Source: Tubulanus polymorphus (taxonomy: Eukaryota > Animalia > Nemertea). From it: a stretch of 64,000 nucleotides of DNA. Positions 13,808 through 62,914 of this stretch are shown here, piece by piece. The notes beneath the pieces were generated by a model that searched no databases, was not told the origin of the DNA, and was given only the letters and a program-made list of their open reading frames with translations. The stretch's first letter is position 1; every line of letters begins with the position of its first letter. The stretch lies in the NCBI RefSeq assembly GCF_964204645.1, contig NC_134030.1:2460778-2524777 (forward strand), given 5' to 3'. A program made the position numbers and the translations under genes.

Positions 13808-16800
13808 ATGCGGTGTAACTGTCCGAGAGTGATCGCTGCCGTTTCATTGTCGATGACGTGTTTCAGTACGGTAGGAAAATATCAGATTTTACACATTTCT
13901 ATCCAAGATGATTATTACCAATGTAATAATAGATAAAAATTGACGAACTTTGAATTTATATTAAATTAATTTTTGTTAAGTCAGGTAATATTTTATGTAC
14001 AATAGACTGCACCTGAGTCGTTATCAATCTGTCGGTACCACTCTCAATTCTAAGATGAATTTTACTGAAATTTATCAGAAAAAGCCCTTTTCCTTTATTC
14101 TCATGTTAGATTTAGTAAAGTAGTGAAATGTTTACAGCAGTCTCAACGCGCTACCGAGTTCCCTGATTCTCAACTCGGTGAAATATTTACAGCAGTCTCA
14201 ACACTACAGAGTTCCCTGTTTCTCAACTCGGTGAAATATTTACAGCAGTCCCAACGCTACCGAGTTCCCTGATTCTCAACTCGGTGAAATATTTACAGCA
14301 GTCTCAACGCGCTACCGAGTTCCCTGATTCTCAACTCGGTGAAATATTTACAGCAGTCTCAACGCTACCGAGTTCCCTGATTCTCAACTCGGTGAAATAT
14401 TTACAGCAGTCTCAACGCTACAGAGTTCCCTGATTCTCAACTCGGTGAAATATTTACAGCAGTCCCAACACGCTACCGATTTCCCTGATTCTCAACTCGG
14501 TGGAATATTTACAGCAGTCCCAACGCTACCGAGTTCCCTGATTCTCAACTCGGTGAAATATTTACAGCAGTCTCAACACTACAGAGTTCCCTGATTCTCA
14601 ACTCGGTGAAATATTTACAGCAGTCTCAATTCTACCGAGTTCCCTGATTCTCAACTCGGTGAAATATTTACAGCAGTCTCAACACTACAGAGTTCCCTGG
14701 TTCTCAACTCCGTGAAATATTTACAGCAGTCTCAATTCTACTGAGTTCCCTGGTTCTCAACTCGGTGAAATATTTACAGCAGTCTCAACGCTACCGAGTT
14801 CCCTGATTCTCAACTCGGTGAAATATTTACAGCAGTCTCAACACTACAGAGTTCCCTGATTCTCAACTCGGTGAAATATTTACAGCAGTCTCAACGCTAC
14901 CGAGTTCCCTGATTCTCAACTCGGTGAAATATTTACAGCAGTCTCAACACTACAGAGTTCCCTGATTCTCAACTCGGTGAAATATTTACAGCAGTCTCAA
15001 TTCTACCGAGTTCCCTGATTCTCAACTCGGTGAAATATTTACAGCAGTCTCAACACTACAGAGTTCCCTGGTTCTCAACTCCGTGAAATATTTACAGCAG
15101 TCTCAATTCTACTGAGTTCCCTGGTTCTCAACTCGGTGAAATATTTACAGCAGTCTCAACGCTACCGAGTTCCCTGGTTCTCAACTCCGTGAAATATTTA
15201 CAGCAGTCTCAATTCTACTGAGTTCCCTGGTTCTCAACTCGGTGAAATATTTACAGCAGTCCCAACTCTACCGTGTTCCCTGATTCTCAACTCGGTGAAA
15301 TATCAAAAGCAGTCCCAACGCTATCGAGTTCCCTGATTCTCAACTCGGTGAAATATCAAAAGCAGTCCTAACGCTACCGAGTTCCCTGGTTCTCAACTCG
15401 GTGAAATATTAAAAGCAGTCCCAACGCTACCGAGTTCCCTGATTCTCAACTCGGTGAAATATTTACAGCAGTCTCAACACTACAGAGTTCCCTGATTCTC
15501 AACTCGGTGAAATATTTACAGCAGTCTCAACACTACAGAGTTCCCTGGTTCTCAACTCGGTGAAATATTTACAGCAGTCTCAACGCTACCGAGTTCCCTG
15601 GTTCTCAACCCGGTGAAATATTAAAAGCAGTCCCAAAGGTACAAAGTAAGGTGGTATCATCTGTAACATTGATAGAAATCATTATTCTGATTTCCATTTA
15701 TTTAAAAAGAAATTCTACAAAGCTGTTTATCACCATATTACAATGTTATATATTCATCATCGTGTCCACGTACATCTAAAATTCGGTCTTTTTAAGAAAT
15801 GAATAACCATAATTCTTCCCATCACGATTTTAATCCCCCGAAAGATTAGCAATTTGAATATCAAATATTAGATAACGAAACATCTGTTACGTGCGTTTGA
15901 AACTATAAACTTAATTTCAATTAAATGAGGACATTTATTCACCCAGTTCCTGAAATGATTGAATGTTTTGGAAAACTATTCCAGAAATTAAACGAACTTC
16001 TATTTTTAAAGAGCGTGTCAAAAATTGACCACAGGTTTTTATATCGCTCTTATGTCTCATTGTCGCAAATTGGTGGAATTGATTTTAAAATGCTAACAAC
16101 CAGAGATTCACACGGTCTAAATGTTGCAAAATGTGGCAAAATCCATCAAATAACCGGTGAAATATGATAAGCACGCATCAGATATAGTTTTTAAAATAGA
16201 GAAATAATGACTCAGCAATGCAAGAAAAAAGTACCCCGACATAATAGCGACTGGCAACTGTAAAATTGTTTATGGAGGCATCGTTTAGACATTTAGTTAA
16301 GATTTAAAGAATTCAAATTGACATGGAATTATGTGGTTTAATTTCAGACGGCCTTGTTTTATCTGATTGGTACTTGTGTCTACGATATTCTGCTACAAAA
16401 CAACGCATCGCAGTCGCAGGAATGGATAGTGTTTCTTTCGCAAGGAATCGGTGTCGGAATGTCGGCAGTATTTTGTCTGCTTATAGTCTGGTTGACAGAA
16501 CAGTTCCTTCTTATGACGCTCTGCGCAATTCTCGTTTTAAACGGAGTGGCGACGATCGTCTGTGGCGTCAGTACGAATTTCATCCTGACCAATGTCTGGT
16601 TAGCGATAGGTGGCGTAGCAGTCGGATCGGGAGAGCTGGGTACGTACCTTTTATATCAAACGAATAGAATGTTTGTGAATTTTAGTTTGAATTAAAGACA
16701 AAGTTTCCAAGTGTTTAAAGATTTGACTCAACTCTGAAAATGAACAAATTTCTTCAATCTCATTCTATTGTGCTCTTTACAACTTTAAGTGTCTTTCTAC

Positions 16801-47872: not shown

Positions 47873-48316
47873 ATAATGCGGGTTGTTCGTCGAGGATACG
47901 TTGAATAGAACGGGGCCGCTGCCACACTTATAGTAGGGTAACATTCGGGTCTAAAGTCATATCATTGGAAATAAACTAATTTAGAATCTAAAGCGAACAA
48001 TGGAAACCCGGTGAAATTAATTTTGAAAATTAATTTTTTTAAGTTGTTACTTCGCGTAGTGCGCCTCGATTGTTTGTCGAAGGGCGGCCATGCGCCATGA
48101 CCAGGTACTCATGCGCCATCTAGTGGAACGCGATTATATTCGCTAGGGCATTTCGAGTCGAAGGACTCGCGCTGGATAGATTTTAATCAAATTTGAGAAG
48201 AAAACCGGGCGTTGTTGTCCGAATGCACACTAGCGATACCTGGTGGATCATCACTTGCCACAGTCGAATGTTAAGAGTCCTAAGTGTTTTTAATTTTGTA
48301 TTTTACAGAGAGAAAG

Positions 48317-49099
48317 ATGCCGATCGGAAACAACATCGTCGATATCGAGGAGTTGATGAAGAACTGGGCGAAAAAATGGTTCGACAAGAACGAGCGCCAC
48401 CAGGTGGAGAAAAAATACGGCAAAATACCCTTCGATAAAATGAACATCGCGATCAATCAATCGAAATTCAGTATCGAGCACGAAACGCCGCTGTACGAAA
48501 AAGAGACGGCGTTAGGGTCGTTCGCGCCACGTACGCACGTTCTCTTTAAATCAACATTCTCGAATACGACCTCTCAAGCGCAGACGTTCAATATGCATAC
48601 GGAACGACGTACGATTTCCAGCGTTAACGTTAACGTTACGGAAGGATTTTGTTTCGGGCAAGAGTTCAGTTTGACGGTCGGTCTTCCGCAGATCGACGCC
48701 GTCGAGGCGAGTATCGGACTCTACCGCGAGGTGAATTTCGAGAAAAGCGCCAACGTCAATAAGGAACAGGAAGTGACGTGGGCGGTCGACTCTCAGATCG
48801 TCGTACCCGCACAGACGACCTCTGTAGCCGAACTGGCGATCAAAGAAGACGAATACAACAGCAAGTTCAACGTGAAGAGCTTCTTCCGCGGCAAATTCTA
48901 CGTGGACTTTATCAAGGATAATGTCGAATTGGCTCGCGCTGTCGGGAGTAATTTGAAAGAGATTTTTACCAGCGATGACGGGTTCAAGGTCGATACTGAA
49001 ACGGGGGATGTTTATTTCGAAACGCACGGTGTTTGCACGTGTAGATTCGGAATCGATCAAGAAGTGAAAATAACCGAAACGAAGAATAAAGTCGATTGA
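48317..49099 (+). CDS. Aerolysin/ETX-MTX2-family (LIN-24-like) beta-pore-forming protein, 260 aa, single coding exon, no signal peptide
   Basis: VLFKSTFSNTTSQAQTFNMHTERRTISS...VTEGF, an amphipathic hairpin region, and TWAVDSQIVVPAQTTSVAELAIKE are typical of the family. Acceptor TTTTACAG ends at 48308, just before ATG 48317. Confidence 0.85.
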   Translation: MPIGNNIVDIEELMKNWAKKWFDKNERHQVEKKYGKIPFDKMNIAINQSKFSIEHETPLYEKETALGSFAPRTHVLFKSTFSNTTSQAQTFNMHTERRTISSVNVNVTEGFCFGQEFSLTVGLPQIDAVEASIGLYREVNFEKSANVNKEQEVTWAVDSQIVVPAQTTSVAELAIKEDEYNSKFNVKSFFRGKFYVDFIKDNVELARAVGSNLKEIFTSDDGFKVDTETGDVYFETHGVCTCRFGIDQEVKITETKNKVD

Positions 49100-49963
49100 A
49101 GATAAAACGGACTAAAATAGAAAAAATCGACTTGATTTTATTGTGATAATTCAATGTTCATCGTTTATAAACCATAGCATATATATTTTATTGCAAATTA
49201 ATCTTTTTGGAACTAAGATAAATGACGACTGTAAAACATATCGTGATGAAAGAATCTTCATTTGAGATTCTTGTGAGAACAAATATCAAAATCAAAAGTT
49301 TCTCGATTTCATTCTAATAAGAGTTTATGAATTGTTGATTGCTTAAAAGATACATATATTATTCAGAATATACTTTAGCGAAACGATGTTAAACATGAAA
49401 TGAAAGATAACGATATACAAACAAGACTGAAAATATATGACAAATACTCTATATACAGATTCAAGATTACTTTTAGTTCTTATTGTTAGTTGTCTCTCAT
49501 CCTGTTTGGATATTACAAGTTGCACATTCGTGGCTGAAAATGAGCTTTAAATTGGTCGCAATTTGTACGATTGGCCATGGAACCAAAACTAGGTTAAAAC
49601 TGGCCTAGAATCCCAAGTCATCAGTCATTATCGGGCCAATTACACAGTTGTGACAAGACTAGTCCTAAGTTGTTATGTTCGCTATAGAAGTAAGATGGTC
49701 TGCAATTGGTCTTACATCCAAGTCATGTCTGTGCAAATGGACCAAGGCCTCGTGCAGTACTATTCCACAGCTGTGTAGATTTATAATAGGAAAATGAGCA
49801 ATTTTCGTTCCGTAGTCGCAGTTGCCGAACAAAAAAAACTAGAAGATAGTAGCGGTGATAGAACAATTTATTCTAATTTCCTCCAATATTTATTTCGATC
49901 AAAGATGTTTATATAATACAGTTTAATGCACAGCAACAGAAACAAAGTAAGGAATCTGTAAAA

Positions 49964-51043
49964 ATGCAGTCCAATAATGTAAGCGACACATTTACCACAA
50001 TAACAAGGCAGCCTTCTCTAAGCTGGTGTCAGGGTGTCAGGAAGAGATACCCAATCCGCTGGAACTATAGATTCAGTGTATTCATGTACCTGGGTTTATA
50101 TTTACCGGCTTCGATTATAGGTATAATGCTCAATATTTTCACGATATTCGTTCTCAGAAAATTGAAAGGCGAATCTTATTTTCTCGTCAAACTTCTCGCG
50201 TTCAACGATCTTTTGTTTATGATGGCGGCTTTCGTTCTGTATCCGCTGAGAACTGCCTATATTTACACCGTGTTAGGGGATATTTTGTTCAGAATCGATG
50301 ACTGGCATTTTGGCGCTGTTTTCATCACGGTAGCCATGCCGTTTTTCTTTATATTTCAAATGACACGTAACTGGTGCACAGTTATTCTAAGTCTGGAAAG
50401 GTTGATCGTAGTTCTATTTCCAATAGCTTCACGTAAAATACCGAAAAAACTGTTGTCAACAGTTGCCTTCTCTGTAGTTTCACTTCTTGCATTTTGTGGA
50501 TTTTTCATTCACTTTATTCCTATAAAGATTATTGGTAAACTGGGCTGCCCGGATACATGGCCTTACATCACAATGCTCAAGACTTGGGTGTCGTATTTGC
50601 CATGGCAAATCCAACAAATATGGCGTTATATATTTGCCGACATTTACCTGTACATGTATGGAACCGTTCTAATCCCTATTTGTAGCTTAGTTCTCATTAA
50701 TTCAATCCTCATTTCTTCGGTGTTAATTCGTAAAATCACCCGACGTTCAGATTTTTTTCAGACCGATCCCTCGTCGAACAAGGAACTGAAAGTTTTAAAA
50801 ATGGTTCTTACAGTTGTAGCAGTGTACATCATCTGCGAGGGTTTCGGTTTCGTCGATCGTATGTCGTATAAACGTTTCTTCAAAATCTACATCGACCCTC
50901 TGGTTCTGCGTAAAATTTCCCTGGCATTTTCTATCATCGATTCGTCGGTAAATTTTTTCATATATTGTTTGACTAACGACAAATTCAAGAAAGTAGCGAT
51001 GATAATCACGTTGAAAAATCGAAAATATTTCATTTCAAAATAA
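49964..51043 (+). CDS. Intronless class A GPCR, FMRFamide-receptor-like/Srw-type, copy 1 (359 aa)
   Basis: 7 TM segments; LNIFTIFVL (TM1), LAFNDLL (TM2), WCTVILSLERLIVVLFP (DRY variant), DSSVNFFIYCL (NPxxY variant). Confidence 0.92.
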   Translation: MQSNNVSDTFTTITRQPSLSWCQGVRKRYPIRWNYRFSVFMYLGLYLPASIIGIMLNIFTIFVLRKLKGESYFLVKLLAFNDLLFMMAAFVLYPLRTAYIYTVLGDILFRIDDWHFGAVFITVAMPFFFIFQMTRNWCTVILSLERLIVVLFPIASRKIPKKLLSTVAFSVVSLLAFCGFFIHFIPIKIIGKLGCPDTWPYITMLKTWVSYLPWQIQQIWRYIFADIYLYMYGTVLIPICSLVLINSILISSVLIRKITRRSDFFQTDPSSNKELKVLKMVLTVVAVYIICEGFGFVDRMSYKRFFKIYIDPLVLRKISLAFSIIDSSVNFFIYCLTNDKFKKVAMIITLKNRKYFISK

Positions 51044-51561
51044 TATACCGGTATCAGAACTCTGTGAGTTTCTCCGGGTCCCTAGCCCTGGGGTTGATGC
51101 TCGATATCGATGTTTCCCAGGAAGAGAGCGTAAATAGATTAGTTCATGGATTCGCTGTCAGGGGCAGCACATGACGGTCGATAATATCTTACACGGCGGC
51201 GCGACATTTCCTAATACCCCGATTTTAAAACAAAAACAAACCAATTAAATATTCATCTTGTTTGTTTTTTGTTTTATTATTTTCGTTTGATATGAGTTAA
51301 TTTATTTAATACAGATATATTATTATCATCGAATATATGTGGCAATTAATTTAAGTTAGCAAACATCTTCGCTTACTCGAATGAATTGTGACCAATGATT
51401 TAATTTGAGTTTCAAGATGGACATATGTTTTCAAATGCAATATGGTTTCAAGATTCGTGTTTCAAAAATGAGTAAAGTTCGATTTGAACGGGATCCTATT
51501 GAGCAGTATATTCTGGAATATGCCGTCCATATCAAATTCTCGATTAAAAATAACGTAAATG

Positions 51562-54500
51562 TTAAGTTTGCAACTTTTTTTCTTCCAAGTCTGCGATAGA
51601 AGGTCCGATCCTGTCGAAATCAATTTCTCCATAAACGGCCGGTTCAACATCCGCCCCGATAATGATTTCCGGTCGTTGCTGCTGCGCGGAATCAGGTTCC
51701 GGCGCGCGTACTGAAACGAAATCTGCATAGATGGCGCCTTCGTCGTTGATTTGCTGGAAAAGAAACAGACGCGAGTTCCTTCGTTACCGTTCAACCATCC
51801 AAAGTCTCTCGTGCATAATTTTGATGAGGAATTTACGAGTCTTAAACAAAATGGATCTCTTTTGATTGACGATTAGTTAGTCTCTCGAGTTCTCATCAAA
51901 GTTGTGCACGATTATCCAAGATGGCCGCCGATGAGAGGATTTGTATTCACACATTAATTAAAATGAAACCCTTACAACGTTCAGTTCACTGCATTCTTTC
52001 TCTGCCGGTGAATCCGGATCGACTTCGATGCTCACTAAACGCGACTCCTTCTTCTCCGCATTCGTCGCTAAAATAACACAAATCAATCTAACTTTACATC
52101 AAGAAACTTTGAATAGACATTTTGATATTGAGGAAGATATTGATTTCTATAGACAATTTATATTGACTTTCTATAATTCAATTGAAAAAAAACTATGTTA
52201 CTGTGTGGGAGATACAGGATTTCAGAGAGCTGCAGGGGTTCGGGTGGAGAAATGGCCTCTGTTTACACTTTGTGATGAATAATCAAAAAATAAAACCCAC
52301 TCCAATTGCGCATTGCTCCTTATACCACTATAGCAACAAACATTTATAACACATTTACCCAATTATTCAATAATCATATCAATCATGAGAAGGTGGAAAA
52401 ACTTGAAAAAGGGCAAGTTTCTGGTGGGCCCTGAATCACAACCCACCCGCCCTCTTACCCCTCCATGACTATATGTTAAGAAACAACTTGAAGAGAGACG
52501 TTTCTGCTCAATTATTAAAGCAGGAATCACCGATAGGATTGAGTCGAAACGTCACTACTCTCCCGTAATTTTTCGATAATATTGCGGGTGATTTCCTTCG
52601 TTCGATAAAGAATATACTGACGTTTATCGTTCAACATTTTGCCGTCCTGTTTCTTTCGTTTTCTCGTGAAAAAGCAACCAACGGCAATGGCCATCAAACA
52701 GCAGCACAGTACACCTGCGATAATAGCTCCCGTAACTGAATTACTGAATCTTCTATCTCCATCTTTCATAGTTCCACCTATTCAAAGTAAACAACATGAT
52801 ACAAAAATAAATTATTATCCGCTAAATCGATTTACGATTAACTGAATTATATGAACGACGACAATTTTTATGAATGAGTGACAACTACAGTCAAAGATCG
52901 TTGGGACCAGGAAAAGTTAATTATCTTTAATTCTCTAAATCAGAAAAAGGAAAATTGCTTTTTTGAAGCTTTCGTACATTTATTCTCGATCAGAAAAATA
53001 TCTTATTGCTAAGCGAGAGAGATCAATGGTGTTACGACGGACTTAAGCGGAATATAATCTGTATATGTCGAAATCGGTGAACTGTTTTTGTGTCGCCTGA
53101 CGCGTCCGATGGTATTTGTGGTGTCGAACCCGGGACGACTGGAACACCTCGCCAGTAACCACAACTGAACCTGTGTCGATTATGTAATTTGAATGGAACA
53201 TGAATTCAATCTTAAGCATTTTCTTTCTGCTTTTGTCTTACCTATTGTTGTTGTTGCTGATGTGGTTGTTGCTGTTGTACCTACAGATTTTTTGTGCTGA
53301 GTCGAACCAGAGACGGCGTCGTGAGGTGCAGTCGATGTTAGTTCAGTAGTGTCACCTAAAATCAAGCAGGTCACACGAACAAAGGTCATATTTTTGCATT
53401 GATTCATTTACATAGTTCAAACAATCGGAAACAAATTTTTCACAATTATGTTATTCAAACGGAACACGAATTCAAGCTTAGTTCAAATACAAGCATTGAA
53501 AAGTCGAAACGTATCTTGTATGTATACCTGTTGTAGCCACTGTTGTCATTATTGCTGTTGTGTTGACAGAATTTGTTTCCTCGCCGTGTACTATTGGCTG
53601 GTTGGCGTTCGCGGAATCATCGTTCACTGTCGAAAATGAACATTTTAACATATCGAATCTACTTCAAAATGTATTCGCTAAAGGATAAGTTGAGCTTAGA
53701 TCATCTTTGAAATATAGTATATTTCATTTCTAATTTTATTTATGACATTTGAGGTTTTAATTACGTATATTTGAGAAAATATCAACAAACCCGTTAACTT
53801 TTTTTCTCTACTTATGCCGACTGCATCACCATCATCATTTTTCCCCTCACAAATCCATTTATCGAACGCATAGTTCCCATTTACTCCAAATATTGTGAGG
53901 ATTACATTCGATCGTCCAGTTTTATTTTCATCAGTACCCTCGATGATGTCTACCCTCGATGGTGTCTGATCTGATACTCCAGTTTCATTACAGTCGATAC
54001 TTTCTTCATCAACCGAGGAACCGGATGTCACATCTTCATTATTACATGTTATTTTGATTGTTCCATTTTTTTGAATAAAGTTAACCTCCTTAGTTTTGGC
54101 GATATCTATTGAACCACAAGTAAAGCTGACTGTGTCTCCAACATTTACAGTTTCCGGGTTTATTTTGAGCTCATATGTACTCCACGCACAATCAACTGTT
54201 TCAACTGGAAAATTCAAAAAGATTCTTTTCCGATCTCCCGATTCCGGAACTAGTTCTAAATACATGGATTTTTTCTGATACTTACTGAGAATAAAAAGAC
54301 GGATCAAAGTAGAAATAAATGCATCAATCTAAAACACAAAATTTACAAAAACTGTACCCTGTTGCCGACGGTAGAAGTTTTATGGCTTTGTCGGTTGTCG
54401 CTATCCCACTTCTGATAGTCGGACGCAGAGTTTGGGTTCAAAACTAAATTAGCCTAAAAAAACATTTTTTTTTTTCAATTTTTTAGCTTTGTATTTCGTC

Positions 54501-54730
54501 ATTTGTTTACATTGAAAACATGTAAAACAATTGATATACCGGTAATCGAATACTTTTATTTCGATTCAAATTCCTTAAACGTGATAGGTAGGAGTGTAAT
54601 CGGTAAATCCTAGATCGTTTATCTGGCCCGGATCCCTAACGGCAGATTGTCCATTCAGGTTATATGAAAGCAGGGAAGTGTGATGTCTCATCACACTTCC
54701 GTGATGAAAGCAATTAAAACTCACCATCAT
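51562..54730 (-). CDS. Type I membrane Ig-domain receptor with mucin stalk and two ITIM/ITSM-like motifs, copy 1, ~371 aa; exons 54730-54725, 54328-54286, 54204-53791, 53626-53528, 53355-53242, 52777-52622, 52067-51976, 51753-51562
   Basis: All junctions are GT-AG and phase-compatible. Signal peptide MMIDAFISTLIRLFILIETVDC; Ig-like exon (VNVGDTVSFTC ... VILTI ... KWICEG); Thr/Ser-rich exons; TM GAIIAGVLCCCLMAIAVGCFF followed by RKRKK; tail with GAIYADF and PAVYGEI. Confidence 0.8.
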
Positions 54731-54939
54731 TTCAACCTTGGAGTAATCAGGTGGATTACTCCAAGTTTCAACTGAGTTCCTCAAACATCTAGCAGCTATA
54801 ATAGACTACAGCGAGACAGCGTGGAGTGATATTTATTTAGACTGATTTTTAGTTCCTATTTCCATAAATAGCTACTGGACCAGGAATATTGACCAGATAC
54901 GGGTATATAACAAATGATATAACAATTGACGCTGAATGA

Positions 54940-55010
54940 ATAAAGCGGAAGTCATGTAAATAAAAGAATCTAACGGTATAATCGCAGTTCTAGGTTTATG
55001 ACGTCATTGC
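54940..55010. promoter_or_regulatory. Candidate bidirectional promoter between IgR (minus) and GPCR (plus); duplicate at ~60780-60850
   Basis: ETS CGGAAGT at 54946-54952 and palindromic CRE ATGACGTCAT at 54998-55007, within the ~490 bp that separate the two start codons. Confidence 0.5.
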
Positions 55011-55220
55011 GTGAGCTGAAATTCGCCAGTGACTTCACAATCATGTATCAGATCATTGAAAAAATATTCCATTCATTTGCGCGTGGACAAAATCTAATGT
55101 AGTAAACCAGCATTTTTTTCATGTGTTCGTATTTTAAGTAAATTATATACTGAATGATAAATGGAATATGTTTATAAATGATGCAAGATAATGAAAATAG
55201 AAACAAACTATATCTGTAAA

Positions 55221-56297
55221 ATGCAGTCGAATAATGTAAGCGACACATTTACCACAATAACGCGGCAGCCTTCTCTAAGCTGGTGTCAGGGTGTCAGGAA
55301 GAGATACCCAATCCGTTGGAACTATAGATTCAGTGTATTCATGTACCTGGGTTTATATTTACCGGCTTCAATTCTAGGTATAATACTCAATATTTTCACG
55401 ATATTCGTTCTCAGAAAATTGAAAGGCGAATCTTATTTTCTCGTCAAACTTCTCGCGTTCAACGATCTTTTGTTTATGATGGCGGCTTTCGTTCTGTATC
55501 CGCTGAGAACTGCCTATATTTACACCGTGTTAGGGGATATTTTGTTCAGAATCGATGACTGGCATTTTGGCGCTGTTTTCATCACGGTAGCCATGCCGTT
55601 CTTCTTTATATTTCAAATGACACGTAACTGGTGCACAGTTATTCTGAGTCTGGAAAGGTTGATCGTAGTTCTATTTCCAATAGCTTCACGTAAAATACCG
55701 AAAAAACTGTTGTCAACAGTTGCCTTCTCTGTAGTAACACTTCTTGCATTTTGTGGGTATTTGATTTACTTTATTCCAATAAAGAATATTGGTAAACTGG
55801 GCTGCCCGGATAGATGGCCTTACATCACAGTGACTACATCTTGGGCGTCGTATTTGTCATGGGATGTTCGTCATCACTGGGGACATATTGCCGACGTTTA
55901 CCTGTACATGTATGGAACCGTTCTAATCCCTATTTGTAGTTTGGTTCTCATCAATTCAATCCTCATTTCTTCGGTGTTAATTCGTAAAATCATCCGACGT
56001 TCAGATTTTTTTCAGACCGATCCCTCGTCGAACAAGGAACTGAAAGTTTTAAAAATGGTTTTTACAGTTGTAGCAGTGTACATCGTCTGCGAGGGTTTCG
56101 GTTTCGTCGATCGTATGAAATACATAAACGTTTTCACAATAAGAATAGATTCGATGGTTCTGCGTAAAATTTCCCTGGCATTTTCTATCATCGATTCGTC
56201 GGTAAATTTTTTCATATATTGTTTGACTAACGACAAATTCAAGAAAGTAGCGATGGAAATCACGTTGAAAAATCGAAAATATTTCATTTCAAAATGA
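55221..56297 (+). CDS. Intronless class A GPCR copy 2 (358 aa)
   Basis: Paralog of 49964-51043; ATG 55221 aligns with the starts of the other copies. Confidence 0.92.
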   Translation: MQSNNVSDTFTTITRQPSLSWCQGVRKRYPIRWNYRFSVFMYLGLYLPASILGIILNIFTIFVLRKLKGESYFLVKLLAFNDLLFMMAAFVLYPLRTAYIYTVLGDILFRIDDWHFGAVFITVAMPFFFIFQMTRNWCTVILSLERLIVVLFPIASRKIPKKLLSTVAFSVVTLLAFCGYLIYFIPIKNIGKLGCPDRWPYITVTTSWASYLSWDVRHHWGHIADVYLYMYGTVLIPICSLVLINSILISSVLIRKIIRRSDFFQTDPSSNKELKVLKMVFTVVAVYIVCEGFGFVDRMKYINVFTIRIDSMVLRKISLAFSIIDSSVNFFIYCLTNDKFKKVAMEITLKNRKYFISK

Positions 56298-56815: not shown

Positions 56816-59800
56816 TTAAGTTTGCAACTTTTTTTCTTCCAAGTCCGCGATAGAAGGTCCGATCCTGTCGAAATCAATTTCTCCATAAACGGCCGGTTCA
56901 ACATCCGCCCCGATAATGATTTCCGGTCGTTGCTGCTGCGCGGAATCAGGTTCCGGCGCGCGTACTGAAACGAAATCTGCATAGATGGCGCCTTCGTCGT
57001 TGATTTGCTGGAAAAGAAACAGACGCGAGTTCCTTCGTTACCGTTCAACCATCCAGTCTCTCGTGCATAATTTTGATGAGGAATTTACGAGTCTTAAACA
57101 AAATGGTTCTCTTTTGATTGACGATTAGTTAGTCTCTCGAGTTCTCATCAAAGTTGTGCACGATTATCCAAGATGGCCGCCGATGAGAGGATTTGTATTC
57201 ACACATTAATTAAAATGAAACCCTTACAACGTTCAGTTCACTGCATTCTTTCTCTGCCGGTGAATCCGGATCGACTTCGATGCTCACTAAACGCGACTCC
57301 TTCTTCTCCGCATTCGTCGCTAAAATAACACAAATCAATCTAACTTTACATCAAGAAACTTTGAATAGACATTTTGATATTGAGGAAGATATTGATTTCT
57401 ATAGACAATTATAGTGACTTTCTATAATTCAATTGAAAAAAAACGATGTTACTGTGTGGGAGATACAGGATTTCAGAGAGCTGCAGGGGTTCGGGTGGAG
57501 AAATGGCCTCTGTTTACACTTTGTGATGAATAATCAAAAAATAAAACCCATTCCAATTGCGCATTGCTCCTTATACCACTATAGCAACAAACATTTATAA
57601 CACATTTACCCAATTATTCAATAATCATATCAATCATGAGAAGGTGGAAAAACTTGAAAAAGGGCAAGTTTCTGGTGGGCCCTGAATCACAACCCACCCG
57701 CCCTCTTACCCCTCCATGACTATATGTTAAGAAACAACTTGAAGAGAGACGTTTCTACTCAATTACGAGAACCGGAATCACCGATAGGATTGAGTCGAAA
57801 CGTCACTACTCTCCCGTAATTTTTCGATAATATTGTGGGTGATTTTCTTCGTTCGATAAAGAATATACTGACGTTTATCGTTCAACATTTTGCCGTCCTG
57901 TTTCTTTCGTTTTCTCGTGAAAAAGAAACCAACGGCAATGGCCATCAAAAAGCAGCACAGTACACCTGCGATAATAGCTCCCGTAACTGAATTACTGAAT
58001 CTTCTATCTCCATCTTTCATAGTTCCACCTATTCAAAGTAAACAACATGATACAAAAATAAATTATTATTGATCGCTAAATCGATTTACGATTAACTGAA
58101 TTATATGAACGACGACATTTTTTATGAATGAGTGACAACTACAGTCAAAGATCGTTGGGACCAGGAAAAGTTAATTATCTTTAATTCTCTCAATCAGAAA
58201 AAGGAAAATTGCTTTTTTGAAGCTTTCGTACATTTATTCTCGATCAGAAAAATATCTTATTGCTAAGCGAGAGAGATCAATGGTGTTACGACGGACTTAA
58301 GCGGAATATAATCTGTATATGTCGAAATCGGTGAACTGTTTTTGTGTCGCCTGACACGTCCGATGGTATTTGTGGTGTCGAACCCGGGACGACTGGAACA
58401 CCTCGCCAGTAACCGCAACTGAACCTGTCTCGATTAAGTAATTTGAATGGAACATGAATTCAATCTTAAGCATTTTCTTTCTGCTTTTGTCTTACCTATT
58501 GTTGTTGTTGCTGATGTCGGCGTTAGTTCAGTAGTGTCACCTAAAATCAAGCAGGTCACACGAACAAAGGTCATATTTTTGCATTGATTCATTTACATAG
58601 TTCAAACAATCGGAAACGAATTTTTCACAATTATGTTATTCAAACGGAACACGAATTCAAGCTTAGTTCAAATACAAGCATTGAAAAGTCGAAACGTATC
58701 TTGTTTGTATACCTGCTGTAGCCACTGTTGTCGTTATTGCTGTTGTGTTGACAGAATTTGTTTCCTCGCCTCGTACTATTGGCTGGTTGGCGTTCGCGGA
58801 ATCATCGTTCACTGTCGAAAATGAACATTTTAACATATCGAATCTACTTCAAAATGTATTCGCTAAAGGATAAGTTGAGCTTAGATCATCTTTGAAATAT
58901 AGTATATTTCATTTCTAATTTTATTTATGACATTTGAGGTTTTAATTACGTATATTTGAGAAAATATCAACAAACCCGTTAACTTTTTTTCTGTACTTTT
59001 GCCGACTAGATCACTATCATTTCCCCCCTCACAAATCCATTTATCGGACGTATAGCTATCTTAAGCATTTTCTTTCTGCTTTTGTCTTACCTATTGTTGT
59101 TGTTGTTGCTGATGTGGTTGTTGCTGTTGTGCCTACAGATTTTTTGTGCTGAGTCGAACCAGACCCGGCGTCGTGAGGTGTAGCGCTTTCATCAGCTGCA
59201 GTCGGCGTTAGTTCAGTAGTGTCACCTAAAATCAAGCAGGTCACACGAACAAAGGTCATATTTTTGCAATGATTCATTTACATAGTTCAAACAATCGGAA
59301 ACGAATTTTTCACAATTATGTTATTTAAACGGAACACGAATTCAAGTTTAGTTCAAATACAAGCATTGAAACGTCGAAACGTATCTTTTATATATACCTG
59401 TTGTAGCCACTGTTGTCGTTATTGCTGTTGTGCTGACAGAATTTGCTTCGTTCGCGGAATCATCGTTCACTGTCGAAAATGAACATTTTAACATATCGAA
59501 TCTACTTCAAAATGTATTCGCTAAAGGATAAGTTGAGCTTAGATCATCTTTGAAATATAGTATATTTCATTTCTAATTTTATTTATGACATTTGAGGTTT
59601 TAATTACGTATATTTGAGAAAATATCAACAAACCCGTTAACTGTTTTTCTCTACTTTTGTCGACTGGATCACCATCATTCCTCCCCTCACAAATCCATTT
59701 ATCGGACGTAGAGTTCTTAATTACTCCCGATATTGTGAGGATTACATTCGATCGTCCAGTTTTATTTTCATAAGTACCCTTGATGCTGTCTACCCTCGAT

Positions 59801-60567
59801 GGTGTCTGATCTGATACTCCAGTTTCATATTTACAGACGATACTTACTTCATCACCCGAGGAATCGGATGTCACATCTTCAGTATTACATGTTATTTTGA
59901 TTGTTCCATTTTTTTGAATAAAGTGAACCTCCTTAGTTTTGGCGATATCTATTGAACCACAAGTAAAGCTGACTGTGTCTCCAACATTTACAGTTTTCGG
60001 GTTTATTTTGAGCTCATATTCACTCCACGCACAATTAATCATTTCAACTGGAAAATTCAAAAAGATTCTTTTCCGATCTCCCGATTCCGGAACTAGTTCT
60101 AAATACATGGATTTTTTCTGATACTTACTGAGAATAAAAAGACGGATCAAAGTAGAAATAAATGCATCAATCTAAAACACAAAATTTACAAAAACTGTAC
60201 CCTGTTGCCGACGGTAGAAGTTTTATGGCTTTGTCGGTTGTCGCTATCCCACTTCTGATAGTCGGACGCAGAGTTTGGGTTCAAAACTAAATTAGCCTAA
60301 AAACATTTTTTTTTTCAATTTTTTAGCTTTGTATTTCGTCATTTGTTTACATTGAAAACATGTAAAACAATTGATATACCGGTAATCGAATACTTTTATT
60401 TCGATTCAAATTCCTTAAACGTGATAGGTAGGAGTGTAATCGGTAATTCCTAGATCGTTAATCTGGCCCGGATCCCTAACGGCAGATTGTCCATTCAGGC
60501 TATATGAAAGCAGGGAAGTGTGATGTCTCATCACACTTCCGTGATGAAAGCAATTAAAACTCACCAT
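56816..60567 (-). CDS. Ig-mucin-TM-ITIM-like receptor copy 2, ~416 aa with duplicated stalk exons; exons 60567-60565, 60171-60129, 60047-59634, 59469-59398, 59225-59091, 58811-58713, 58540-58496, 58028-57873, 57319-57228, 57007-56816
   Basis: Same splice sites as copy 1; all four stalk exons are symmetric phase 1-1 and open. Confidence 0.75.
58976..59056 (-). pseudogene. 3' remnant of a third, different Ig-domain exon (YTSDKWICEGGNDSDLVGKSTEKKLT)
   Basis: Homologous to the end of the Ig exons, keeps the donor, lacks the 5' part; differs from both intact copies. Confidence 0.8.
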
Positions 60568-61059
60568 TATTTCAACCTTGGAGTAATCAGGTGGATTACT
60601 CCAAGTTTCAACTGAGTTCCTCAAACATCTAGCAGCTATAATAGACTACAGCGAGACAGCGTGGAGTGATATTTATTTAGACTGATTTTTAGTTCCTATT
60701 TCCATAAATAGCTACTGGACCAGGAATATTGGCCAGATACGGGTATATAACAAATGATATAACAATTGGCGATGAATGAATAAAGCGGAAGTCATGTAAA
60801 TAAAAGAATCTAACGGTATAATCGCAGTTCTAGGTTTATGACGTCATTGCGTGAGCTGAAATTCGCCAGTGACTTCACAATCATGTATCAGATATCAGTG
60901 AAAAAATATTCCATTCATTTGCGCGTGGACAAAATCTAATGTAGTAAACCAGCATTTTTTTCATGTGTTCGTATTTTAAGTAAATAACTGAATGATAAAT
61001 GGAATATGTTTATAAATGATGCAAGATAATGAAAATAGAAACAAACTATATCTGTAAAA

Positions 61060-62136
61060 ATGCAGTCGAGTAATGTAAGCGACACATTTACCACAATAAC
61101 AAGGCAGCCTTCTCTAAGCTGGTGTCAGGGTGTCAGGAAGAGATACCCAATCCGTTGGAACTATAGATTCAGTGTATTCATGTACCTGGGTTTATATTTA
61201 CCGGCTTCGATTCTAGGTATAATACTCAATATTTTCACGATATTCGTTCTCAGAAAATTGAAAGGCGAATCTTATTTTCTCGTCAAACTTCTCGCGTTCA
61301 ACGATCTTTTGTTTATGATGGCGGCTTTCGTTCTGTATCCGCTGAGAACTGCCTATATTTACACCGTGTTAGGGGATATTTTGTTCAGAATCGATGACTG
61401 GCATTTTGGCGCTGTTTTCATCACGGTAGCCATGCCGTTTTTCTTTATATTTCAAATGACACGTAACTGGTGCACAGTTATTCTGAGTCTGGAAAGGTTG
61501 ATCGTAGTTCTATTTCCAATAGCTTCACGTAAAATACCGAAAAAACTGTTGTCAACAGTTGCCTTCTCTGTAGTAACACTTCTTGCATTTTGTGGGTATT
61601 TGATTTACTTTATTCCAATAAAGAATATTGGTAAACTGGGCTGCCCGGATAGATGGCCTTACATCACAGTGACTACATCTTGGGCGTCGTATTTGTCATG
61701 GGATGTTCGTCATCACTGGGGACATATTGCCGACGTTTACCTGTACATGTATGGAACCGTTCTAATCCCTATTTGTAGTTTGGTTCTCATCAATTCAATC
61801 CTCATTTCTTCGGTGTTAATTCGTAAAATCATCCGACGTTCAGATTTTTTTCAGACCGATCCCTCGTCGAACAAGGAACTGAAAGTTTTAAAAATGGTTT
61901 TTACAGTTGTAGCAGTGTACATCGTCTGCGAGGGTTTCGGTTTCGTCGATCGTATGAAATACATAAACGTTTTCACAATAAGAATAGATTCGATGGTTCT
62001 GCGTAAAATTTCCCTGGCATTTTCTATCATCGATTCGTCGGTAAATTTTTTCATATATTGTTTGACAAACGACAAATTCAAGAAAGTAGCGATGATAATC
62101 ACGTTGAAAAATCGAAAATATTTCATTTCAAAATAA
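61060..62136 (+). CDS. Intronless class A GPCR copy 3 (358 aa)
   Basis: Only 2 aa differences from copy 2; homology to the cassette ends near 62281. Confidence 0.92.
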   Translation: MQSSNVSDTFTTITRQPSLSWCQGVRKRYPIRWNYRFSVFMYLGLYLPASILGIILNIFTIFVLRKLKGESYFLVKLLAFNDLLFMMAAFVLYPLRTAYIYTVLGDILFRIDDWHFGAVFITVAMPFFFIFQMTRNWCTVILSLERLIVVLFPIASRKIPKKLLSTVAFSVVTLLAFCGYLIYFIPIKNIGKLGCPDRWPYITVTTSWASYLSWDVRHHWGHIADVYLYMYGTVLIPICSLVLINSILISSVLIRKIIRRSDFFQTDPSSNKELKVLKMVFTVVAVYIVCEGFGFVDRMKYINVFTIRIDSMVLRKISLAFSIIDSSVNFFIYCLTNDKFKKVAMIITLKNRKYFISK

Positions 62137-62914
62137 TATACCGGTATCAGAACTCTGTGAGTTTCTCCGGGTCCCTAGCCCTGGGGTTGATGCTCGATAT
62201 CGATGTTTCCCAGGAAGAGAGCGTAAATAGATTAGTTCATAGATTCGCTGTCAGGGGCAGCACATGACGGTCGATAATATCATGTTGAAGCCGGGAATGA
62301 AACTAATTCGTACCAAAAATAAACCGTATTAGAATCGTGTACAGTGTTTCCTTGTAGGTTTGAGGCCTGGATAGTCGGCGCGAGTTTTCGTGGATCGAGT
62401 AACCTCTGATCCAGGAGGCCATATCATCCCGGCACAAATTAGTTCACATATTCCCCGCCAATGATTTATTTAGGGGCGGCACTAGACAGCAAAAGCCTAC
62501 GACATTCCGTATATCTACTGTGGCATGCGAGTACTCACGCAATCGCATTTTTACATATAATTTTACACCTCTGCACATTTTTGTGTTTTTGTGCTGTCTA
62601 GAATTTCGTTTGTCTCTTTATTGGACACACCTGATATAAAGAGTGTTATGATAGTAACAAAGTATCAATAAAGTTTACTTTGACATTGAATTGTTACTGT
62701 GGCAAGCGAGTAATCTTTAGGCGTCCCATTACATCATCGATAAACAATTTTGCCGTACTCGAGATATTTAGGCCATTATGTGTTTTTTGACAGAGGTTCT
62801 CTGTTTAATACACTTTTAATCTCAAAGGTAGTTTGTTTGTTGGTTTCTCTCCGAATATGTTAAAGAACAGTTTGATTTCATTGCGCTAGAAAAGACGGAG
62901 CTGTCGATTCCAGA

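What the first reader, a model, noticed from the sequence alone, without database searches (positions are those of the whole stretch)
51562..54730. Hidden 8-exon Ig-mucin receptor with tandem ITIM/ITSM-like tyrosines
Seen: the model is assembled from splice signals, including a first coding exon of only ATG(ATG)|GTGAGT. The last exon, not in the ORF track in this frame, encodes QINDEGAIYADFVSV...EPAVYGEIDFDRIG, with two Tyr motifs 32 aa apart, and is protein-identical in both copies. Known: tandem YxxL/I motifs with similar spacing recruit SHP-type phosphatases in inhibitory Ig receptors. Both motifs deviate from strict consensus (Ala at -2; Phe at +3 in the first), so inhibitory function is inference.
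Basis: partly seen in the sequence, partly recalled or inferred. Interest (0 to 1): 0.8.

Follow-up and report, generated by a model that had tools for sequence, protein, structure and literature searches.

The report
Ribbon-worm Ig-mucin receptor, two-tyrosine tail
This is a real, already annotated but uncharacterised ribbon-worm gene for a small cell-surface receptor whose tail is one copy of a two-tyrosine signalling exon shared by at least 15 receptor genes in the same genome and resembling the docking sites of vertebrate 'brake' receptors such as PD-1 and PZR; whether it actually inhibits is untested.

Summary
On the minus strand, eight GT-AG exons (54730 to 51562) close a 371-aa frame that equals RefSeq XP_074653181.1 of Tubulanus polymorphus (Nemertea). 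The tandem copy B equals XP_074652459.1 (10 exons, 416 aa). So the gene is annotated as 'uncharacterized', not hidden. The build is a short hydrophobic leader, one Ig-like domain, a Thr-rich stalk, a TM helix, and a 109-aa tail with only two tyrosines, 32 residues apart.

The tail's identity between copies proves nothing, because introns differ by only 1.2%. The real support is new. The last exon is a portable phase-0 cassette found at 15 or more loci, behind Ig, Ig-FN3 and CUB ectodomains, and both tyrosines are invariant. Family consensus motifs match PZR's N-ITIM (IYA.LD) and PD-1's ITIM (YGELDF). Three paralogs carry strict ITIMs, and two SH2-SH2-PTP loci exist. This gene itself fails strict ITIM/ITSM (Ala at -2 in both motifs, Phe at +3 in the first).

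The Ig fold is likely but unproven: Pfam is sub-threshold and AlphaFold failed twice, while all Atlas structural neighbours are Ig. The Ig exon shows dN/dS of about 4 between copies. No RNA data could be laid. The scan noted the same tail earlier on other DNA of this genome (s1-506837). Verdict: a new variant of a known kind, of moderate interest.

The parts
54725..54730 (-). Copy A, coding part of exon 1: ATGATG followed by donor GTGAGT
   Evidence: Same start as RefSeq P0002. Copy B keeps only the second ATG.
54286..54328 (-). Copy A exon 2: hydrophobic leader (putative signal peptide), phase 0 to 1
   Evidence: This is the only open frame of the three, and the one that joins the Ig exon. 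It is 100% identical in copy B. No signal-peptide predictor was available.
53791..54204 (-). Copy A exon 3: Ig-like (V-set-like) domain, 138 codons, five Cys, three N-glycosylation sequons; ends in a G-strand-like KKLTV
   Evidence: The donor at 53791 reproduces P0002. dN/dS is 4.0 against copy B.
53528..53626 (-). Copy A exon 4: Thr-rich stalk, phase 1-1
53242..53355 (-). Copy A exon 5: Thr-rich stalk, phase 1-1
52622..52777 (-). Copy A exon 6: transmembrane helix plus basic juxtamembrane stretch (RKRKK); donor GTCAGT. Read-through would stop at 52527.
51976..52067 (-). Copy A exon 7: acidic cytoplasmic linker, phase 1 to 0
   Evidence: 0 of 92 differences from copy B.
51562..51753 (-). Copy A exon 8: terminal two-tyrosine cassette (63 codons plus TAA), phase 0 acceptor
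51718..51735 (-). Tyr motif 1, AIYADF (Y317 at 51729-51727)
   Evidence: G-3, I-1, Y and A+1 are invariant in the aligned paralogs.
51616..51639 (-). Tyr motif 2, AVYGEIDF (Y349 at 51633-51631)
   Evidence: Y, E+2 and D+4 are invariant, followed by an invariant Arg.
56816..60567 (-). Copy B of the gene (10 exons: 60567-60565, 60171-60129, 60047-59634, 59469-59398, 59225-59091, 58811-58713, 58540-58496, 58028-57873, 57319-57228, 57007-56816)
   Evidence: It equals RefSeq isoform X1, P0043 (416 aa).

Best explanation
This is a lineage-restricted type I membrane glycoprotein of the ribbon worm Tubulanus polymorphus. It has a short leader, one fast-evolving Ig-like (V-set-like) ligand-binding domain, an O-glycosylated Thr-rich stalk, one TM helix and a disordered 109-aa tail. 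The last exon is a portable signalling cassette with three conserved blocks (DG[TA][IV]YA, Pxx[IV][ILV]G, and Y[GAS]E[LIV]D[FML]xR). Exon shuffling has placed it behind Ig, Ig-FN3 and CUB ectodomains in at least 15 genes. The proposed mechanism runs as follows. Ligand engagement leads to phosphorylation of Y317 and Y349 by Src/Abl-type kinases. The doubly phosphorylated tail then docks a tandem-SH2 effector, most likely one of the two SHP/corkscrew-type phosphatases encoded in the genome, as in PZR or PD-1. What is shown: the gene structure, the duplication, the cassette family, the invariance of the tyrosines, diversifying selection on the ectodomain, and the presence of SH2-SH2-PTP loci. What is inferred: the Ig fold, phosphorylation, the binding partner and the inhibitory sign.
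For: The gene model closes in both copies with GT-AG borders and equals the RefSeq proteins exactly (names). The tail exon has paralogs at 15 or more loci, each with a polypyrimidine-AG phase-0 acceptor at the homologous codon. Invariant positions are G6, I8, Y9, A10, P28, G33, Y41, E43, D45, R48 and P51. The host genes carry Ig, I-set/V-set + fn3, or CUB domains above Pfam cut-offs. Family motif 1 (TIYARLD) matches PZR N-ITIM GPVIYAQLDHS. Family motif 2 (YGELDF) matches PD-1 ITIM FSVDYGELDFQ from Y to Y+5. The reference peptides are from PMC11085718. Strict ITIMs occur at motif 2 in three paralogs, and a strict ITSM (TIYARI) in one (consensus definitions from PMC8631942; the CD150 TIYxx(V/I) definition from PMC12151841). 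The Tyr-Tyr spacing is 21-40 residues, 32 here. The local contexts resemble Abltide (AIYA) and the optimal Src peptide (YGE plus a hydrophobic residue). Two SH2-SH2-PTP loci lie on C7. In the Ig exon there are 28 non-synonymous and 2 synonymous changes, dN is 8 times the intron rate (p = 6.6e-13), and the indels are whole codons. Ig-likeness is supported.
Against: This gene's own motifs fail strict ITIM and ITSM, with Ala at -2 in both and Phe at +3 in the first. In the family, position -2 of motif 2 is mostly Gly, and +3 of motif 1 is Gly in one member, so the constraint pattern is not that of a textbook ITIM. No RNA reads could be laid, so transcription, the junctions and the choice of 3' end rest on RefSeq's model and on comparison. 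The Ig fold is not demonstrated. The leader is atypical: Asp in the n-region, Arg in the h-region. No relative was found outside this species, so nothing can be transferred from a characterised orthologue. Both motifs also fit YxxPhi sorting signals.
Confidence: 0.45

Rival explanations
1. The tail is a phosphotyrosine docking cassette, but for effectors other than SHP-type phosphatases (Src-family or Csk kinases, SAP-like adaptors, Shc, PI3K and so on). The receptor would then be activating or adhesive-signalling rather than inhibitory.
For: The same cassette sits on a nephrin-like Ig-FN3 protein and on CUB receptors, which suggests a generic adaptor site. The hydrophobic residue at -2 that SHP SH2 domains favour is absent in most members. 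YGEI resembles the optimal Src peptide context. A third conserved block (Pxx[IV][ILV]G) has no counterpart in ITIM receptors.
Against: Two invariant tyrosines 21-40 residues apart suit a tandem-SH2 reader. The extended matches to the PZR and PD-1 SHP-2 sites and the strict ITIMs in three paralogs point to SHP. ITAM spacing is not met.
Confidence: 0.25
2. The tyrosines are unphosphorylated YxxPhi sorting signals that bind AP-2 or other clathrin adaptors, and the cassette controls endocytosis or polarised delivery.
For: YADF, YGEI and the paralogs' YARL all fit YxxPhi. The motif class itself is from general knowledge and was not tested here.
Against: Conservation is strongest at -3, -1 and +1 (G, I/V, A) and at +2, +4 and +5 (E, D, F), which AP-2 does not read. 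One paralog has Gly at +3 of motif 1 yet keeps the remaining positions.
Confidence: 0.12
3. The locus is not expressed as modelled. It could be a silent young duplicate, or a transcript that ends at the stop at 52527 or starts at a different first exon, in which case the tail or the leader is not part of the protein.
For: No RNA holder was found. The only possible RNA run has nothing here. RefSeq isoform X2 of copy B starts at an internal Met without a leader. The leader is atypical.
Against: Both copies keep all exons, phases and splice sites. 28 of 30 substitutions in the Ig exon are non-synonymous with no stop, and both indels are whole codons, which shows selection on the protein. RefSeq models call first coding exons of 6 and 3 nt, which is hard to do without intron evidence; that last point is inference.
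Confidence: 0.08

Closest known systems
PZR / MPZL1 (vertebrate protein-zero-related, SHP-2 docking receptor)
   Same: It has one V-type Ig domain, a TM helix and a tail with two tyrosine motifs that dock SHP-2. PZR N-ITIM GPVIYAQLDHS aligns with the family motif 1 DGTIYARLDNM (IYA.LD shared). PZR C-ITIM VVYADI aligns with this gene's AIYADF (YAD shared). Peptides are from PMC11085718.
   Different: There is no detectable sequence homology. Position -2 is Thr or Ala instead of Val. The Tyr spacing is 32 here, against about 22 in PZR (the PZR figure is from memory). This gene has a Thr-rich stalk, and its cassette has a third conserved block.
PD-1 (ITIM VDYGEL plus ITSM TEYATI)
   Same: It is a single V-set Ig receptor with tandem tyrosine motifs. 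The family motif 2 is identical to PD-1's ITIM from Y to Y+5 (YGELDF), and this gene has YGEIDF. Gly at pY+1 is the feature shown to tune SHP1 versus SHP2 choice in PD-1 (PMC8631942).
   Different: The order is reversed: the ITSM-like motif comes first and the YGELDF motif second. Position -2 is Gly, Ala or Ser instead of Val. There is no homology of the ectodomain. The resemblance is probably convergence on SH2 preferences.
Hydractinia Alr family (cnidarian allorecognition IgSF; PMC9546547)
   Same: These are lineage-specific, clustered, fast-evolving type I IgSF genes whose V-set-like domains mostly escape Pfam. Some tails carry ITIM or ITAM motifs, and SHP homologues are present in the genome.
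   Different: Alr proteins have two or three Ig-like domains and very diverse tails. Here there is one domain and a strongly conserved tail exon shared with non-Ig receptors. No allorecognition phenotype is known in nemerteans.
Botryllus fester / uncle fester receptors (PMC12582321)
   Same: These are polymorphic invertebrate recognition receptors with ITIM-type signalling (title and abstract seen).
   Different: They have different ectodomain types and a different phylum. The paper was not read in depth here.

Membership tests
ITIM, (S/I/V/L)xYxx(I/V/L) (PMC8631942) | Ser, Ile, Val or Leu at -2 of the tyrosine | tested here: not met
   Ala at -2 in both AIYADF and AVYGEI. It is met at motif 2 in paralogs L041, L042 and L044 (SVYGEV, SQYSEL, SEYAIV).
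ITIM, (S/I/V/L)xYxx(I/V/L) (PMC8631942) | Ile, Val or Leu at +3 | tested here: inconclusive
   Motif 2 has Ile (met). Motif 1 has Phe (not met).
ITIM, (S/I/V/L)xYxx(I/V/L) (PMC8631942) | Phosphorylated in cells and binds the SH2 domains of SHP-1, SHP-2 or SHIP | not testable with these tools
   Only the availability of effectors was shown: two SH2-SH2-PTP loci on C7.
ITSM, TxYxx(V/I) (PMC8631942; the CD150 motif TIYxx(V/I) in PMC12151841) | Thr at -2 and Val or Ile at +3 | tested here: not met
   This gene has AIYADF. Eleven of 15 family members have Thr at -2, and L038 (TIYARI) meets the motif fully.
ITAM, Yxx[I/L]x(6-9)Yxx[L/I] (PMC9546547) | Two YxxL/I motifs 6-9 residues apart | tested here: not met
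   The tyrosines are 32 residues apart, 21-40 in the family.
Immunoglobulin superfamily, V-set-like domain | Sequence match to an Ig profile above the curated threshold | tested here: not met
   Ig_3 scores 11.7 bits (copy A) and 17.7 bits (copy B) against a cut-off of 30. The 'ig' family scores 15.5 against 21.8. There is no Ig hit on the full proteins.
Immunoglobulin superfamily, V-set-like domain | Beta-sandwich Ig fold with a B-F disulphide | tested here: inconclusive
   AlphaFold gave pLDDT 36.5 and 33.2. The Atlas model (pLDDT 0.49) has 10 of 10 nearest clusters Ig, with TM 0.57-0.66. A lambda V domain is the best PDB hit at E 0.079. hhalign against this genome's own Ig domains gives 37.6% probability over strands A-C only. 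The candidate Cys pairs are C46-C135 or C70-C135.
Type I membrane receptor | N-terminal signal peptide | tested here: inconclusive
   The 17-residue hydrophobic leader has Asp and Arg inside it. No predictor was available. RefSeq isoform X2 of copy B lacks the leader.
Type I membrane receptor | A single TM helix with basic residues on the cytoplasmic side | tested here: met
   A stretch of about 21 hydrophobic residues from residue 243 is followed by TRKRKK. There are weak matches to TM-juxtamembrane profiles.
T. polymorphus two-tyrosine terminal-exon cassette (defined here) | A phase-0 terminal exon with the DG[TA][IV]YA, Pxx[IV][ILV]G and Y[GAS]E[LIV]D[FML]xR blocks | tested here: met
   The profile scores 94.3 bits on both window copies.

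The most novel reading that the evidence does not exclude
The cassette is a portable inhibitory (SHP-docking) signalling exon of nemerteans, either an independent invention or a deep relative of the PD-1/PZR type of tail. The tandemly duplicated Ig receptor, co-duplicated with a GPCR and under strong diversifying selection on its ectodomain, would then be part of an undescribed recognition system (pathogen, gamete or self/non-self) in a phylum with essentially no known immune receptors.
Probability: 0.15. Interest if true: 0.8.

Novelty: new variant of a known kind. Interest (0 to 1): 0.5.

Why it matters
Receptors that pair a variable Ig-type ectodomain with tandem SHP-docking tyrosines are central to vertebrate immune control. 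Outside chordates they are documented only in scattered cases. Here a ribbon worm shows a sharply conserved two-tyrosine exon reused on at least 15 receptors with unrelated ectodomains. Its consensus reproduces the extended PD-1 and PZR docking sites, and one host gene has an ectodomain evolving at dN/dS of about 4. If the cassette binds the worm's SHP-type phosphatases, it would give a compact, testable example of how inhibitory signalling modules spread by exon shuffling. It would also give a first handle on recognition receptors in Nemertea. If it does not bind them, it is still an uncharacterised conserved signalling or sorting module.

Tried and rejected
1. RNA evidence. The run search found only DNA-like holders plus one possible RNA run. 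Laying X5, X1, X2 and X3 gave genomic contigs across the introns and only a 35-nt low-complexity piece for X5. Both caps are used, so the junctions remain untested.
2. My first donor for the Ig exon (53812, GTAGAG) also closes the frame (364 aa). I dropped it for 53791, which reproduces RefSeq and keeps a G-strand-like KKLTV.
3. AlphaFold on the Ig exon and on the full domain, each with the only two sequences available, was unusable. No fold search was run on those models.
4. Identity of the tail between the copies was rejected as evidence of constraint.
5. The ITAM reading was rejected on spacing.
6. The profile search of the tail against 1.84 billion representatives gave five true hits, all from this genome. 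The other 33 are repeat proteins that match positions 2-35 several times (P0008 was read).
7. The Atlas look-up on the cytoplasmic part gave no usable hit. Pfam on the tail exon found nothing.
8. The Rfam gathering scan of the window gave no match.
9. The repeat finder on the whole window was swamped by a 53-bp satellite, so a local BLAST was used instead.
10. The look-up of encoding contigs for P0002 found nothing on record.
11. No typed, joined exon sequence was sent to any search tool. Exons were searched by reference, and full-length searches used the stored protein P0002. Joining was done only inside scripts, to translate the model and compare it.
Full report
WHAT IS THERE. The window is eukaryotic DNA with about 38% G+C. 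Protein look-ups place it on contig C6 of the 268-Mb assembly of Tubulanus polymorphus, a palaeonemertean ribbon worm. The finding lies in a head-to-tail duplication with a unit of about 5.26 kb. Copy A runs 49902-55164, copy B runs 55165 to about 61000, and a partial third unit runs 61003-62281. Each full unit holds a single-exon GPCR-like ORF on the plus strand and, convergent to it, the gene in question on the minus strand.

GENE MODEL. Reading the minus strand, I assembled eight exons with AG/GT borders and consistent phases. They are ATGATG|GTGAGT (54730-54725), a 43-nt hydrophobic leader, a large Cys-containing exon, two phase 1-1 Thr-rich exons, a TM exon, a short acidic exon, and a 63-codon terminal exon that ends at TAA 51562. 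Copy B keeps every exon, phase and splice site. It has two extra phase 1-1 stalk exons, which come from an internal duplication of about 660 bp. In copy B the first ATG has become ATA, but the ATG that abuts the donor is kept.

A profile search later returned P0002, a 371-aa public protein that is RefSeq XP_074653181.1, 'uncharacterized protein LOC141907438'. With the Ig-exon donor at 53791, my model equals P0002 exactly, and the copy B model equals XP_074652459.1 (P0043, 416 aa). The gene is annotated rather than hidden.

I sent no joined exon sequence to any search tool. Exons were searched by reference, and full-length searches used the stored id P0002.

EXPRESSION. This could not be tested. 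The run search returned four DNA-like holders and one possible RNA run. Laid on 51400-54900, the first three cover the introns and the last gives only a 35-nt low-complexity piece. Support for translation is therefore indirect, and comes from three sources:
- RefSeq calls first coding exons of 6 and 3 nt and two isoforms for copy B. That is unlikely without intron evidence, but this is my inference.
- Both copies keep the frame.
- The substitution pattern, described next.

SELECTION BETWEEN THE COPIES. Introns and flanks differ at 27 of 2269 sites, or 1.2%. Exons 2, 6, 7 and 8 differ at 3 of 483 sites, which is not different from neutral (p = 0.34). The identical tail therefore says nothing about constraint. 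The Ig exon, by contrast, has 28 non-synonymous and 2 synonymous differences plus two whole-codon indels. This gives dN = 0.098, dS = 0.024 and dN/dS = 4.0, and dN exceeds the non-coding rate with p = 6.6e-13. The exon is thus read in this frame and has been diversifying since the duplication. The B, C and C' strand region is almost unchanged. The changes cluster at the N-terminus, in the Cys-bounded insert, in the E-F stretch and in the loop after the last Cys.

THE ECTODOMAIN. Pfam gives only sub-threshold Ig matches on the exon (Ig_3 at E 0.39 for copy A and 0.005 for copy B; 'ig' at 0.022) and none on the full proteins. AlphaFold with the only two available sequences failed twice (pLDDT 36.5 and 33.2), so I ran no fold search on those models.

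Four weaker lines agree on an Ig-like fold:
- The ESM Atlas's own model of this protein is low-confidence (pLDDT 0.49). Even so, its ten nearest structural clusters for residues 18-156 are all Ig families, with TM 0.57-0.66 over 96-118 aligned residues. Named feature hits are V-set or ig.
- The best PDB sequence match is an antibody lambda V domain (E 0.079). It aligns the A-B-C strands and puts FIQKNG where V domains have WYQQKPG.
- hhalign against eight bona fide Ig domains of this genome gives 37.6% probability (E 3.4e-4), over the same half only.
- The exon ends in KKLTV, which looks like a G strand.

I rate an Ig-like fold at about 0.7. No relative of the ectodomain exists elsewhere in the genome or in 5.8 billion proteins.

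STALK, MEMBRANE, TAIL. The 70-residue stalk is 39% Ser+Thr, with 20 Thr. A hydrophobic stretch of about 21 residues is followed by TRKRKK. The 109-aa cytoplasmic part has exactly two tyrosines, Y317 and Y349. The leader is short and atypical, and no predictor was available.

THE TAIL IS A SHARED CASSETTE. This is the main new result. Searching the genome with the last exon found nine further loci, and a profile raised this to at least 15 plus one broken copy. Every one has a polypyrimidine tract and AG directly before the homologous first codon, in phase 0. In the nine-sequence alignment G6, I8, Y9, A10, P28, G33, Y41, E43, D45, R48 and P51 are invariant, at 31-45% overall identity.

Upstream exons and the matching RefSeq proteins show unrelated ectodomains:
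- several Ig-like domains (P0004);
- V-set/I-set plus fn3 (P0005);
- a 'nephrin-like' protein with at least five Ig domains and fn3 (P0020);
- CUB-CUB (P0001, 'cubilin-like' isoforms).

The profile, scored against 1.84 billion cluster representatives, found only these five clusters, all from this species. The other hits are repeat proteins. The cassette is therefore a portable terminal exon, and so far it has been seen only in T. polymorphus. Because few nemertean proteomes are likely to be in these libraries, this absence is weak evidence. My CUB result agrees with it.

HOW ITIM-LIKE IS IT? The consensus definitions are ITIM S/I/V/LxYxxI/V/L and ITSM TxYxxV/I (PMC8631942). The ITSM was first defined on CD150 as TIYxx(V/I) (PMC12151841).

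This gene has AIYADF and AVYGEI. Ala at -2 fails both patterns, Phe at +3 fails in the first motif, and Ile at +3 passes in the second. The family-wide picture is:

| | Residue at -2 | Residue at +3 |
|---|---|---|
| Motif 1 | Thr 11, Ala 4 | Leu 8, Phe 4, Ile 2, Gly 1 |
| Motif 2 | Gly 8, Ser 3, Ala 2, Asp 1 | Leu 8, Ile 4, Val 2 |

Strict ITIMs occur at motif 2 in three divergent members (SVYGEV, SQYSEL, SEYAIV). A strict ITSM occurs at motif 1 in one member (TIYARI). The Tyr-Tyr spacing is 21-40 residues.

I compared the motifs with the peptides printed in PMC11085718. The family motif 1, DGTIYARLDNM, parallels PZR's N-ITIM GPVIYAQLDHS. The family motif 2, YGELDF, equals PD-1's ITIM from Y to Y+5. 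This gene's YAD matches PZR's C-ITIM VVYADI. The contexts also resemble Abltide (EAIYAAPF...) and the optimal Src peptide (...EIYGEF...), which favours phosphorylation. The genome encodes two loci with SH2, SH2 and PTP exons in that order on one strand, at C7:4,118,074-4,125,084 and C7:19,099,445-19,105,016. The cytoplasmic part has no structural or feature neighbour, as expected of a disordered tail that carries short motifs.

READING. The gene is real (about 0.9). It is a type I Ig-like/mucin receptor (about 0.7), with a phosphotyrosine docking cassette (about 0.65). SHP-type recruitment with an inhibitory outcome is the best single mechanism, but at only about 0.35-0.45. The reasons for that low figure are that the -2 position is not the hydrophobic residue SHP SH2 domains prefer, that a third conserved block has no ITIM counterpart, and that the cassette also serves adhesion-type and CUB receptors. 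The rivals are another SH2 or PTB effector (sign unknown), YxxPhi sorting, and non-expression or a different 3' end.

NOVELTY. IgSF receptors with ITIM-type tails are a known kind, and include invertebrate cases (Hydractinia Alr, PMC9546547; Botryllus). New here are the exon-level cassette shared across ectodomain classes, its three-block consensus that reproduces the extended PD-1 and PZR sites, and a species-restricted, positively selected Ig-like host gene in a phylum without described immune receptors. I class it as a new variant of a known kind, with interest 0.5.

Noticed in passing
window 53791-54204 vs 59634-60047: The Ig-like exon differs between the tandem copies at 28 non-synonymous and 2 synonymous sites plus two codon indels (dN/dS 4.0), while the flanking introns are 98-100% identical. 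This indicates strong diversifying selection, or conversion from an unseen donor.
   Followed up: yes
window 58496-59225: Copy B carries an internal duplication of about 660 bp. It adds two in-frame Thr-rich exons and leaves an unspliced remnant of the 3' end of the Ig exon at 58967-59055. Stalk length therefore varies by exon duplication.
   Followed up: partly
window 49964-51043, 55191-56297, 61060-62136 (+): There are three copies of a single-exon GPCR-like ORF of 358-368 aa, each convergent to an Ig-receptor copy. The third unit has the GPCR only. The copies differ mainly in the stretch around residues 180-225 and near residue 300.
   Followed up: no
window 52453-52569 and 54671-54700: Two short stretches in introns 6 and 1 have contig depth 20- to 90-fold above their neighbours in the DNA runs. 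The second is a perfect 12-bp-stem hairpin, with contigs branching at both sides. These are high-copy dispersed elements, and Rfam gives no match.
   Followed up: partly
window 14043-15777 and 22267 onward: There are large arrays of a 53-bp tandem repeat (up to 70 registered copies at 90-99% identity), in two blocks about 6.8 kb apart.
   Followed up: no
G000:C6:19050150-19052058 (L043, L045, L046): Two tail-cassette copies lie in inverted orientation about 1.5 kb apart. One is split by a frameshift between the two tyrosine blocks, and both have YGESYF in place of YGELDF. They look like decaying members of the family.
   Followed up: no
G000:C7:4118074-4125084 (-) and G000:C7:19099445-19105016 (+): Two loci have SH2, SH2 and tyrosine-phosphatase exons in that order, which is the SHP/corkscrew architecture. 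Only exon-level Pfam hits were seen, and the genes were not assembled.
   Followed up: partly
P0001 vs L017/L026 (G000:C8): The RefSeq CUB-CUB protein that carries the cassette (536 aa) lacks the TM segment that is present as an ORF in the paralogous locus L017 (GFWATVGSAIGF...).
   Followed up: no
window 48284-49099 (+): There is a 271-aa open frame just upstream of the duplicated block. Its function is unknown and it was not examined.
   Followed up: no
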